DNA of 64,000 nucleotides from Pelomyxa schiedti. Taxonomy: Eukaryota; Protista; Evosea. Below the pieces are notes generated by a model that was given only the letters and a program-made list of their open reading frames with translations, searched no databases and was not told the DNA's origin. Shown here one piece after another: positions 54,277 to 63,699 of the stretch. The DNA is taken from NCBI GenBank assembly GCA_020536535.1, contig JAHLWZ010000821.1:48036-112035 (forward strand), written 5' to 3'. Numbering within the stretch: the first letter of the stretch is position 1; every line of letters begins with the position of its first letter. The position numbers were made by a program, and so were the translations under genes.

Positions 54277-54355
54277 ACAGGCAGCAGACTACTCTGCCGA
54301 CAATCACATTCGTTGATTTGTCCAACAACACCTGAGAGAGTGCGAGTTTGTGAAA

Positions 54356-62008: not shown

Positions 62009-62029
62009 CCCTAATAAAAAAAAAAAAGA

Positions 62030-62101
62030 TTCCGATGCCGGGAATCGAACCCGGGGCCACTGAGTGAAAGTCAGAGATGTTGCCAACTACACCACATCGG
62101 A
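62030..62101 (-). tRNA. tRNA-Glu(TTC): tRNA-Glu(TTC)
   Basis: Reverse complement TCCGATG TG GTGT AGTTGGCA ACAT C TCTGA CTTTCAC TCAGT GGCC CCGGG TTCGATT CCCGG CATCGGA A. Perfect acceptor and T stems, one T-T mismatch in the anticodon stem, downstream T-run terminator. Confidence 0.95.
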
Positions 62102-62107
62102 TTTCAC

Positions 62108-63112
62108 GAGGAGTAAAGCCCACACGTCGGGGTATTTATTACGAACCTTTAAAACTGGGAACGCCAGAGGGGGTTGAGGGGGGTTGGTGTTGTTGGTGTC
62201 TGCTACGGTGTTGTGTTGGGTATCTTATTTTTGGTTTGCGCGATGCTTTGTTTGTTTTGTTGTTGTGTGTTTGGTTTGACGGAGGTTTGACGGCTACTGG
62301 TTTAATGTCCAGTGAGTTGGGGATTACGTTCAGGATCTTGTGAGGGTTCGTGTTTAGCTTGTGCTGGAGGTCGGAGTTATGTCCGCATCTGTTTAGGATG
62401 TGCTTCATCATTTCCGGAGAGTCACATCCATAGTGGCAAGCTGGGACCACATCGCCATGCGGTTGTTGAGTGGTTTCATGTTGGTGGCTACTTGAGGGCT
62501 TGATTGCGGATCGATGGTGGGATTCTGGGAGTGTTAAGGTTCTTGACTAAGTTGAGCCAGTTGGTTTCAGTTGGCGGAGTGTTCATGGCAGTGTGAAGTT
62601 TGTGGTGTAGGGGTTTTGTGGGTCGTTCTTTCATGATACTCCTGTAGATGTCAGTGGGAGTGCTCATGTGGGCTGGAATATGCTTATTGAGGAGGGCAAT
62701 CTCCCAAATTGGGCTGGTGCCATCTTTGTTTGTGGGGTTGTGACGATTGGGGTTGCGATAGGCTGAAACTGCTGTTGCAACGTTCCACCACCTCATATCC
62801 AGCAAGGGTGTAGGCAGCCCCCCTTGCTTTTTGAGGGTGGTAAAAAGGAACCTCCTTTTAACGGGAGGGTATTCACTCTGGATCCTTATTTCACCACCGA
62901 TCCCAGCTTCAGGCCCCTGGCCAAAACCCCCAGGGAGGGAATGGAATGACGACATTTGTAGATAAGATAGAATAGATGGTTTGTCTTTGGCTGTGTTAAA
63001 GCTGTCGGACATTGTTGGTCAATTTGGGGAATGTGGTCACGCCCGGGATCGATCCCACAACCTCTCGGTTTTGGTGATTTCATCTGAAACCGCTAAACAA
63101 AAAGGTCTCCCT
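62108..63112 (-). mobile_element. 5'-truncated, decayed non-LTR retrotransposon flanked by a 16-bp target-site duplication that overlaps the tRNA-Glu 5' end
   Basis: Exact direct repeat ccacatcggatttcac at 62092-62107 and 63113-63128. ORF2 C-terminal motifs LKKQGGL, IYRSIMK, NW..L.KNLN.PRIPPSIRN (zf-RVT-like) and CHYGCDSPEMMKHILNRC (CCHC). TAA stop at 62139-62141 overlapping AATAAA. Confidence 0.85.
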
Positions 63113-63136
63113 CCACATCGGATTTCACAACTTCGA

Positions 63137-63699
63137 ATGAGAGAGTTACAGATTTTTTTAAAAAACAAATGAAACGAAACCACCCAAAGGAATTAAATTT
63201 TGTATTTTTTTTCCTTCCTACTTTTCCCCTTAAACTTCGGAGGGGATAGGCTCCGCTCCCTTGGGACAGTTTTTTGTAGGAGTGTTACAATCGTCATCAC
63301 CTCAGAGAGTTCCACAATCTCATCTCCCCAGAAATGTGGAAAGAGACTTTGCTGGGATCTGAGCCGATCTGCTCCTGGTGCAAAGGGGGAAAAAAAAAAA
63401 AAAAAGAGGCAAAGTCACTTTACAACTGTGTTTTAACAAAAAAACAAATAACCAACTGTGTTGCACTCTCCCGTGCCGGCTCCATAGGTGACGAAACGAC
63501 AACCACAGCCAACGCAACAGCTACCGCAACACCCAATTCTCTTGGCTGGGCTAGGCTCTGACTGTTATGACGATTGCGACTTGTGACTACGAGTACAAAC
63601 ACAGGCGCAACCGCGATCGCAATCGCAAACGCAACCGCAATCACAACCGAATAGCGGTCGCGAACCCGCACTTTTTAAAAAAATCTGTAACTCTCTCAT
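63137..63699. mobile_element. Candidate non-autonomous TIR element (563 bp) with perfect 28-bp terminal inverted repeats
   Basis: atgagagagttacagatttttttaaaaa (63137-63164) is the exact reverse complement of 63672-63699. No coding capacity. The only possible TSD is the outer AT. Confidence 0.6.

What the first reader, a model, noticed from the sequence alone, without database searches (positions are those of the whole stretch)
62030..63128. Non-LTR retrotransposon inserted exactly at a tRNA 5' end, with a TSD spanning -6 to +10 and the tRNA left intact
Seen: a 1005-bp LINE-like fragment (zf-RVT-like region, CCHC knuckle, stop and AATAAA) lies between two exact 16-bp repeats. On the minus strand the repeat reads GTGAAA|TCCGATGTGG, i.e. 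six leader bases plus the first ten bases of tRNA-Glu. The element is co-oriented with the tRNA, its 3' end faces the gene, and the downstream copy regenerates the complete tRNA with A and B boxes. Known: Dictyostelium non-LTR elements insert ~50 bp upstream (TRE5) or ~100 bp downstream (TRE3) of tRNA genes, and yeast Ty3, an LTR element, inserts near the Pol III start site. Inference: staggered cuts bracketing the mature tRNA 5' end would be a different safe-haven targeting geometry and possibly an independent origin in archamoebae. No PD-(D/E)xK motif is visible after the CCHC knuckle, so an APE-type (L1/Tx1-like) element is more likely.
Basis: partly seen in the sequence, partly recalled or inferred. 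Interest (0 to 1): 0.9.

Follow-up and report, generated by a model that had tools for sequence, protein, structure and literature searches.

The report
LINE that lands on tRNA starts
The amoeba Pelomyxa schiedti carries a family of jumping genes (LINE retrotransposons) that insert at the first bases of tRNA genes, always pointing the same way as the gene. The copy in this window is a short, broken member that left its tRNA-Glu intact. The strategy is known from social amoebae; here it occurs in a new lineage and reaches further into the gene.

Summary
An exact 16-bp repeat (62092-62107 and 63113-63128) flanks a 1005-bp element (62108-63112, minus strand). The repeat is six leader bases plus the first ten bases of tRNA-Glu(TTC), and the tRNA downstream is complete.

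The element is not a 5'-truncated fragment. It keeps the family's true 5' end (about 100 nt of leader plus the start codon) and true 3' end, with internal deletions and a frameshift. It is a non-autonomous copy.

The targeting is a family trait. In the same genome (Pelomyxa schiedti) other 3' ends abut tRNA-Gln, Ile, Ser, Met and a Pro-like tRNA, at -8 to about +7 of the tRNA. Other 5' ends follow the first 10-28 nt of tRNA-Glu, Gln and Leu. All copies point the same way as the gene. Insertions inside the tRNA truncate it, so "tRNA left intact" is not general.

Fuller copies encode an APE endonuclease, a reverse transcriptase (RT) and a CCHC finger. They have no restriction-like endonuclease, no RNase H and no poly(A) tail. 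The closest relative is a Mastigella eilhardi transcript. More distant relatives are APE-RT-RNase H elements, not L1/Tx1.

The geometry is not unprecedented. Dictyostelium purpureum NLTR-A sits 2-6 bp upstream of tRNAs (PMC5006619). This scan had already found this Pelomyxa family on other DNA (s1-585511, s1-611410). It is a new variant of a known kind.

The parts
62030..62101 (-). tRNA-Glu(TTC), complete, regenerated downstream of the insertion
   Evidence: ARAGORN. Sequence. At least 25 copies of this gene with the same GTGAAA leader exist in the genome.
62013..62029 (-). T-run (T12) directly after the tRNA, a probable Pol III terminator
   Evidence: Sequence. Function inferred.
62092..62107 (-). 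Downstream copy of the 16-bp TSD (tRNA -6 to +10)
   Evidence: the repeat finder D3, 100% identity.
62108..63112 (-). Internally deleted, non-autonomous copy of the tRNA-targeting LINE family (1005 bp)
   Evidence: 58 matches in the same genome. Both termini are shared with other copies.
63013..63112 (-). Conserved 5' leader of the element. It begins AGGGAGACCTTTTTG and holds a T5 run and a GGGATCGATCCC palindrome.
   Evidence: Alignment A1 of 7 copies. No Rfam match in the equivalent region of copy C832.
62488..63012 (-). ORF remnant of 174 aa. It starts at the element's own ATG (MSDSF...) and is fused by deletion to the post-RT part of ORF2 (...GGLPTPLLDMRWWNVA...). It ends at a frameshift stop.
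   Evidence: the ORF listing. 58% identity to residues 338-455 of an intact ORF. No Pfam hit.
62139..62450 (-). ORF remnant of 103 aa with the CCHC finger (C-X3-C-X7-H-X4-C, about 62385-62438). It runs on into the 3' UTR because of the 216-bp deletion.
   Evidence: the ORF listing. Compared with intact C-termini.
62302..62307 (-). Site of a 216-bp deletion relative to other copies. It removes the last 58 codons, the natural stop and the start of the 3' UTR.
   Evidence: Gap between query 806 and 811 in all longer copies. Coordinates in C1517.
62108..62301 (-). Conserved 3' UTR tail, 85-96% identical in more than 15 copies. It holds TAATAAAT about 35 nt from the end, ends in ...GTGGGCTTTAC + TCCTC, and has no poly(A).
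63113..63128 (-). Upstream copy of the 16-bp TSD. This is an orphan tRNA-Glu leader plus the first 10 nt.
   Evidence: the repeat finder D3. Sequence.

Best explanation
Window 62108-63112 (minus strand) is a non-autonomous, internally deleted copy of a Pelomyxa schiedti non-LTR retrotransposon family. Full members encode an APE endonuclease, an RT and a CCHC finger.

The family integrates by target-primed reverse transcription at the 5' edge of Pol III genes, mostly tRNA genes of many kinds, always in the gene's orientation.

Inferred steps:
1. The endonuclease nicks the template (antisense) strand within about -8 to +7 of the mature tRNA start. In this window the nick is between -7 and -6.
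2. The free 3'-OH primes cDNA synthesis on the element RNA. That RNA is recognised through its conserved, non-polyadenylated 3' UTR.
3. The sense strand is cut 16-20 bp or more further in, at +10 here and at +20 to +28 elsewhere.
4. Repair duplicates the stretch between the two cuts.

When the first nick lies upstream of +1, as here, the downstream copy is a whole tRNA gene. Only an orphan leader plus 10 nt is left at the element's 5' end. When the nick lies inside the gene, the tRNA loses its first bases.

The targets differ in sequence and include one small-RNA gene that is not recognisably a tRNA. Recognition is therefore most likely of the Pol III initiation complex or start-site architecture, not of a DNA word. 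That last point is inference.
For: **Shown**
- The exact 16-bp TSD and the complete tRNA.
- 3' junctions next to tRNAs, all co-oriented:
  - Gln at -6, -8 and +3
  - Ile(TAT) at -6/-7
  - Ser at about +3/+4
  - Met, matching the tRNA model from position 4
  - a Pro-like tRNA at about +3
  - decayed tRNA remnants
- 5' junctions where the conserved element start follows the first 10 nt (Glu), 20-22 nt (Gln, twice) or 28 nt (Leu-CAA) of a tRNA.
- A second complete short copy in tRNA-Gln with a 20-bp TSD, +3 to +22.
- A genome-wide pattern count. 9 of 53 matches to the 3'-end motif are followed by a B-box core at tRNA distance. The reversed-pattern control gave 2 such hits among its 17 matches. 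All nine are real tRNAs.
- Chance of one junction landing within 10 bp of a tRNA start in the right orientation is at most about 4e-4. This uses the rough upper count of 2160 tRNA candidates and is my arithmetic.
- RT domain in sibling copies (PF00078, E 4e-28 to 6e-32), collinear with the window's sequence.
- APE domain:
  - PF03372, E 3.4e-13, at C966:36063-36704, contiguous with element DNA
  - weak hits in the Pelomyxa proteins P0005 and the L075 fragment
  - a clear hit in the Mastigella homologue P0165
- No space for a restriction-like endonuclease after the CCHC.
- The same geometry at an unidentified multicopy unit of about 102 nt that ends in a T-run.
- Contig C5317 repeats both junctions.
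Against: - The assembly comes from amplified single cells (PMC8887013), which can create chimeras.
- Four or five 3' ends have no recognisable Pol III gene beside them: C173, C198, C1650 and the C711/C1517/C3542 flank. About five further motif sites could not be inspected.
The link between the 5' leader and the APE-RT ORF rests on deletion derivatives only.
- The variable pyrimidine tail of about 5 nt makes each 3' junction uncertain by a few bases.
- The nick positions, their order and the role of Pol III factors are inferred from DNA scars, not observed.
Confidence: 0.85

Rival explanations
1. Sequence-specific targeting. The endonuclease recognises a short DNA motif common to Pelomyxa Pol III gene starts, for example the conserved leader ending in TGAAA, and not the transcription machinery.
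For: Untouched tRNA genes in the fetched loci mostly have leaders ending TGAAA, TTGA or TGAA. Several 3' junctions sit just 5' of such a leader: GTGAAA, ACTTGAAA.
Against: Other junctions lie before TGTTCA or AACAAGT, or inside the tRNA at +3 to +7 in Gln, Ser, Met and a Pro-like tRNA. No common word surrounds these nicks. The sense-strand cut varies from +10 to +28.
Confidence: 0.15
2. The association is secondary. One or a few old insertions next to tRNA genes were spread by segmental or tandem duplication of tRNA clusters, or copies far from tRNAs were lost by selection. There is no active targeting.
For: tRNA genes are multicopy here (at least 25 tRNA-Glu copies). C5317 is a near-duplicate of the window locus. 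The C711, C1517 and C3542 copies share one flank.
Against: The junctions involve at least seven tRNA types with unrelated flanks, different junction positions and different TSD lengths (16 and 20 bp). They come from two subfamilies only about 58% identical in protein. Selection alone does not give base-level precision and strict co-orientation.
Confidence: 0.04
3. Assembly or amplification artefact. The 16-bp repeat and the junctions are chimeras made by whole-genome amplification or by the assembler.
For: The assembly was built from seven micromanipulated, amplified cells and is fragmented into 5337 scaffolds (PMC8887013). C5317 has an odd micro-version of the element, 22 nt of 5' end joined to 128 nt of 3' end at a GCG microhomology. 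That could be a chimera.
Against: The same architecture recurs at many loci with different tRNAs and with element termini conserved to the base. Two contigs support this locus. Chimeras do not create precise TSDs.
Confidence: 0.03

Closest known systems
Dp_NLTR-A of Dictyostelium purpureum (Spaller et al. 2016, PMC5006619; review PMC5911963)
   Same: A non-LTR element with an APE domain, found 2-6 bp upstream of the first base of the mature tRNA sequence, at many tRNA genes, in an amoebozoan. The window copy sits 6 bp upstream.
   Different: NLTR-A has an RNase H domain where the zinc finger would be. The Pelomyxa family has a CCHC finger and no detectable RNase H. The Pelomyxa window runs from -8 to about +7, so some insertions truncate the tRNA. 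TSDs reaching +10 to +28 are documented here. Whether the RTs are related could not be tested, because no NLTR-A sequence was at hand.
TRE5 and TRE3 of Dictyostelium discoideum
   Same: APE-RT-zinc finger non-LTR elements that use tRNA genes as safe landing sites. Internally deleted, non-autonomous derivatives exist. TRE5-A ORF1 binds TFIIIB (PMC5911963).
   Different: They land about 50 bp upstream or about 100 bp downstream, never at the gene's first bases, and end in oligo(A). No TRE relative appeared among the best RT matches, although those lists carry few names.
Ty3 of Saccharomyces cerevisiae and DGLT-A of Dictyostelium
   Same: Insertion within a few bases of the Pol III transcription start, directed by TFIIIB in the case of Ty3 (PMC5006619, PMC6673722).
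   Different: These are LTR elements with an integrase and short fixed TSDs, inserted about 12-15 bp or more upstream of the mature tRNA start. The mechanism is unrelated to target-primed reverse transcription.
Elements that insert inside small-RNA genes: Dada DNA transposons, and the LINEs Keno, Mutsu and Dewa (PMC3706591)
   Same: Multicopy Pol III or snRNA genes serve as targets. Some insertions lie inside tRNA genes.
   Different: Each of those families recognises one specific sequence in one gene type. The Pelomyxa family uses many unrelated tRNAs at the same relative position.
RIME/ingi-type deletion derivatives (from my own knowledge of trypanosome elements)
   Same: A short non-autonomous element made of the 5' and 3' ends of the autonomous LINE, presumably moved in trans.
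   Different: A different host and clade. Here the 3' breakpoints differ from copy to copy.

Membership tests
Non-LTR (LINE) retrotransposon, APE type | Reverse transcriptase of the non-LTR kind | tested here: met
   PF00078, E 4e-28 to 6e-32, in sibling copies collinear with the window element. Best solved-structure matches are R2 and LINE-1 ORF2p. The window copy itself has lost the RT.
Non-LTR (LINE) retrotransposon, APE type | N-terminal apurinic/apyrimidinic-type endonuclease | tested here: met
   PF03372, E 3.4e-13, at C966:36063-36704, contiguous with element DNA. Weak hits in P0005 and L075. PF03372 at residues 61-281 of the Mastigella homologue P0165. Not read on a single intact Pelomyxa ORF.
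Non-LTR (LINE) retrotransposon, APE type | No LTRs, and variable-length TSDs typical of target-primed reverse transcription | tested here: met
   The two termini are unrelated sequences. TSDs are 16 bp and 20 bp.
tRNA-gene-targeting retroelements (functional class) | Recurrent insertion at a fixed position and orientation relative to many different tRNA genes | tested here: met
   Glu, Gln, Ile, Ser, Met, Leu and a Pro-like tRNA, at -8 to +7, all co-oriented.
tRNA-gene-targeting retroelements (functional class) | Recognition through TFIIIB, TFIIIC or Pol III | not testable with these tools
   Only indirect support: the targets differ in sequence, and one multicopy small-RNA unit with a T-run is also used.
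NLTR-A/NLTR-B lineage of dictyostelids | RNase H domain downstream of the RT | tested here: not met
   No PF00075 hit in Pelomyxa C-termini or in Mastigella P0165, even at E up to 5. Only about 100 aa follow the CCHC.
NLTR-A/NLTR-B lineage of dictyostelids | RT groups with NLTR-A in a tree | not tested
   No NLTR-A sequence was obtainable by reference. The nearest unnamed relatives are APE-RT-RNase H ORFs, so a link is possible.
L1/Tx1 clade | RT groups with L1/Tx1 elements; zf-RVT C-terminal domain; poly(A) tail in L1 | tested here: not met
   In the RT tree the family lies on the other side of a branch with 99% SH-aLRT support from the hits that carry zf-RVT. No named reference clades were included. 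zf-RVT scores only E 0.15. No poly(A) at any 3' end.
R2/CRE/NeSL-type site-specific LINEs | Restriction-like endonuclease (PD-(D/E)xK) after the CCHC motif | tested here: not met
   Intact C-termini end about 100 aa after the CCHC, with no domain hit.

The most novel reading that the evidence does not exclude
An archamoebal LINE lineage, present in Pelomyxa and expressed in Mastigella, reads the Pol III initiation complex itself. It nicks the template strand at the transcription start and cuts the sense strand inside the A-box region. On this reading it marks every active Pol III gene, including an undescribed multicopy small RNA of about 102 nt. It either arose independently of the dictyostelid tRNA-targeting LINEs, or shares with NLTR-A an ancient amoebozoan ancestor that already targeted tRNA starts.
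Probability: 0.4. Interest if true: 0.65.

Novelty: new variant of a known kind. Interest (0 to 1): 0.55.

Why it matters
**What is already known.** tRNA genes are the classic safe haven for retroelements in compact genomes. Known non-LTR examples come almost only from dictyostelids.

**What this case adds**
- A second amoebozoan lineage, the anaerobic Archamoebae. Its genome paper does not mention transposons or tRNAs, and no paper in the library joins Pelomyxa schiedti with retrotransposons.
- The insertion window overlaps the gene's first bases. This shows both the safe outcome (tRNA rebuilt by the TSD) and the costly one (tRNA beheaded).
- Base-level scars for both strand cuts, which constrain where the endonuclease sits relative to the Pol III start site.
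- Insertions may help flag unannotated Pol III genes.

**Limits.** The principle and a near-identical position (NLTR-A, 2-6 bp upstream) are published. This scan had already noted the family elsewhere in the genome.

Tried and rejected
- **Reads:** No empty-site or long-read check was made and read laying was not used.
- **More genome DNA:** No full-length copy (for example C966 or C900) could be read, and five further 3'-end motif sites stayed uninspected.
- **Full tRNA catalogue:** the RF00005 search scored only 63 of about 2160 rough candidates. A genome-wide distance table was not possible. A pattern count was used instead.
- **tRNA-like or Pol III promoter in the element's 5' leader:** no Rfam hit. 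The B-box-like palindrome does not form a T-arm. Dropped.
- **TAATAAAT near the 3' end as a replacement upstream box for the tRNA:** native tRNA upstream regions show no consistent A/T box. Left open, not claimed.
- **Clade naming:**
  - PDB matches to R2 and L1 are equally good.
  - The Atlas search gave only generic RT clusters.
  - Cluster look-ups gave no taxa except Mastigella.
- **tRNA targeting in the distant RNase H-bearing relatives:** seven metagenomic contigs hold no tRNA. Only one of them has more than 0.6 kb after the ORF, so this says little.
- **Restriction-like endonuclease type, LTR/integrase type and chance insertion:** all rejected on the evidence above.

Full report
**1. 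The observation**

On the minus strand the window reads: upstream flank, GTGAAATCCGATGTGG, 1005 bp, GTGAAATCCGATGTGG continuing into TGTAGTTGG....
- ARAGORN calls tRNA-Glu(TTC) at 62030-62101 on the minus strand.
- The repeat finder reports the 16-nt repeat at 62092-62107 and 63113-63128 as exact. The neighbouring bases differ, so the duplication is exactly 16 bp: six leader bases and tRNA positions 1-10.
- The downstream copy continues into a complete tRNA followed by T12.

**2. Organism**

The genome has 52,367,397 bases in 5337 contigs. A sibling ORF is 100% identical to "Pol protein [Pelomyxa schiedti]". The published P. schiedti assembly has 52.4 Mb in 5337 scaffolds, built from seven micromanipulated cells (PMC8887013). 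That paper does not mention transposons or tRNAs. No paper in the library joins P. schiedti with retrotransposons.

**3. What the 1005 bp are**

The element has 58 matches in the genome.

- **3' end.** The last 195 nt are 85-96% identical in more than 15 copies. They end in ...GACGTGTGGGCTTAAC plus about five pyrimidines, with no poly(A).
- **5' end.** The first bases, (A/G)GGGAGACCTTTTTGTTTAGCGG, are a boundary shared with seven other copies. The window copy therefore starts at the family's true 5' end.
- **Leader and ORF start.** About 100 nt of leader are followed by the element's own ATG at 63012.
- **Losses.** The reading frame is fused by deletion to the part of ORF2 that follows the RT (58% identity to residues 338-455 of an intact ORF). 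It is then broken by a frameshift. Just after the CCHC finger the copy lacks 216 bp that all longer copies have.
- **Other short copies.** They join the same 5' region to different points of ORF2.
- **Conclusion.** The window copy is a non-autonomous deletion derivative with both ends intact.

**4. What the family encodes**

- **RT.** Sibling copies have a non-LTR-type RT (PF00078, E 4e-28 to 6e-32).
- **C-terminus.** About 220 aa follow the RT, then C-X3-C-X7-H-X4-C, then about 100 aa to the stop. There is no room for a restriction-like endonuclease, and no RNase H hit.
- **APE.** An APE domain (PF03372, E 3.4e-13) lies at C966:36063-36704. It is directly contiguous with DNA 92-96% identical to the stretch upstream of the RT in copy C997. 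Weak APE hits occur in that copy and in the Pelomyxa protein P0005, which runs on into the RT.
- **Closest relative outside Pelomyxa.** This is a 1420-aa ORF from the Mastigella eilhardi transcriptome: 43% identity, APE at 61-281, RT at 583-813, no RNase H. The family is therefore shared with, and expressed in, a related archamoeba.
- **More distant relatives.** At about 30% identity they are almost all unnamed metagenomic APE-RT-RNase H ORFs.
- **Tree.** In a quick RT tree the Pelomyxa clade is sister to those (SH-aLRT 85). It is separated by a branch with 99% support from the hits that carry zf-RVT. No named clade references could be included, so the clade remains unnamed. L1/Tx1 is not favoured.

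I did not build a consensus or read through stops, as the tool notes ask.

**5. Targeting is a family property**

3' junctions (first target base relative to the mature tRNA +1), all co-oriented:

| Target | Contig | Position |
|---|---|---|
| tRNA-Glu | window | -6 |
| tRNA-Gln | C1718 | -6 |
| tRNA-Ile(TAT, with intron) | C478 | -6/-7 |
| tRNA-Gln | C2765 | -8 |
| tRNA-Gln | C832 | +3 |
| tRNA-Ser | C2312 | about +3/+4 |
| tRNA-Met | C3920 | Rfam tRNA model from position 4 |
| tRNA-Pro-like | C597 | about +3 |

- **Decayed remnants.** tRNA remnants with T-runs follow the ends at C729 (27 bits, just under threshold), C791, C806, C258 and C312.
- **No Pol III gene seen.** None is recognisable at C173, C198, C1650 or the flank shared by C711, C1517 and C3542.
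- **5' junctions.** The element start follows the first 10 nt of tRNA-Glu (window), 20-22 nt of tRNA-Gln (C258, C832) or 28 nt of tRNA-Leu(CAA) (C4844).
- **Second complete copy.** C832 has both ends: a 1.17-kb copy in tRNA-Gln with a 20-bp TSD, +3 to +22.
- **Pattern count.** The 3'-end motif occurs 53 times, against 17 for the reversed control. It is followed by a B-box core at tRNA distance 9 times, against 2, and all nine are real tRNAs.
- **Chance.** With at most about 2160 tRNA candidates, one junction falls within 10 bp of a tRNA start in the right orientation with probability of about 4e-4 or less. Chance is excluded.
- **A non-tRNA target.** The same geometry holds for a multicopy unit of about 102 nt. 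It has at least 10 copies at 92-96% identity and is followed by T7. It has no Rfam or ARAGORN hit. It is met once at a 3' junction (C659) and once at a 5' junction (C819).

**6. Mechanism**

The scars fit target-primed reverse transcription.
1. The first nick falls on the tRNA template strand at the left edge of the TSD, here between -7 and -6.
2. cDNA is primed on an RNA recognised through its specific 3' UTR. Conservation of that tail in all deletion derivatives and the lack of poly(A) fit this.
3. The second cut falls on the sense strand 16-20 bp or more downstream, inside the D-arm/A-box region.

A nick upstream of +1 restores the gene. A nick at +3 to +7 beheads it. tRNA genes are abundant (at least 25 tRNA-Glu copies with the same leader), so either outcome is cheap for the host.

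Targets differ in sequence and no word is shared at the nicks. Recognition of the Pol III start complex is therefore the likeliest basis, as for Ty3 and TRE5-A (PMC5911963). This is inference. A leader-motif model (TGAAA) is the main rival.

**7. Is the locus real?**

Contig C5317 (501 bp) carries the same upstream flank, the same 16-bp repeat twice and the same tRNA at 97.8% identity. Its element is reduced to 22 + 128 nt. It also lacks a 563-bp MITE-like insert that the window has just upstream. Two independent contigs thus support both junctions. No contig shows the site empty of the LINE. Reads could not be consulted.

**8. Comparison with what is known**

- The Pelomyxa family differs in domain set (CCHC, no RNase H), in host lineage, in a window that crosses into the gene, and in documented TSDs reaching +10 to +28.
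- TRE5 and TRE3 land tens of bases away from the gene. Ty3 and DGLT-A are LTR elements. Dada, Keno, Mutsu and Dewa each recognise a specific sequence (PMC3706591).
- Earlier notes of this scan (s1-585511, s1-611410) describe the same family on other pieces of this genome. My independent checks agree with them.

**9. Verdict**

This is a new variant of a known kind: a tRNA-start-targeting APE LINE of Archamoebae, seen here as a dead, non-autonomous copy.

Noticed in passing
window 63137-63699: A MITE-like 563-bp element with perfect 28-bp terminal inverted repeats, probably flanked by a TCAT duplication. It sits about 14-18 bp upstream of the tRNA-Glu start. At least 3 copies at 95-97% identity occur elsewhere (C158, C702, C373). 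It is absent from the otherwise matching contig C5317, so it was inserted after the LINE.
   Followed up: partly
L076:2813-2915 (C659); also C727, C807, C1224, C1012: A multicopy unit of about 102 nt (at least 10 copies at 92-96% identity, tandem at about 730-bp spacing in C807 and C1224). It has a T-arm-like hairpin and a T7 run, and no Rfam or ARAGORN match. The LINE uses its 5' end as it uses tRNAs. It may be an undescribed Pol III small RNA or an odd tRNA.
   Followed up: partly
L032 (contig C5317, 501 bp): A second version of the window locus. The LINE is reduced to 22 nt of 5' end joined to 128 nt of 3' end at a GCG microhomology. It could be an allele, a paralogue or an amplification chimera.
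   Followed up: partly
L079 (C711:88280-90174): Head-to-tail cluster of several partial copies. One 3' end is followed after 39 nt by the inner part of another copy's 5' region. This would fit repeated insertion at one target, but no tRNA is left there.
   Followed up: no
5' breakpoints in C258, C2312, C819, C4458 (L081, L016, L082, L025): Several short copies share nearly the same 5' breakpoint, about 347-352 nt from the 5' end, but have different 3' breakpoints in ORF2. This could reflect a splice donor, a preferred template switch or the edge of a 5' module. Unexplained.
   Followed up: no
tRNA upstream regions in window 54286-54355 and loci L006, L034, L040, L080: Leaders of untouched tRNA genes mostly end in TGAAA, TGAA or TTGA just before +1. 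This may be the Pol III start context of this species.
   Followed up: no
L006:1029-1121: tRNA-Ile(TAT) with an intron. ARAGORN's default run called it tRNA-Leu(AAG). With intron search on, it was called Ile(TAT).
   Followed up: yes
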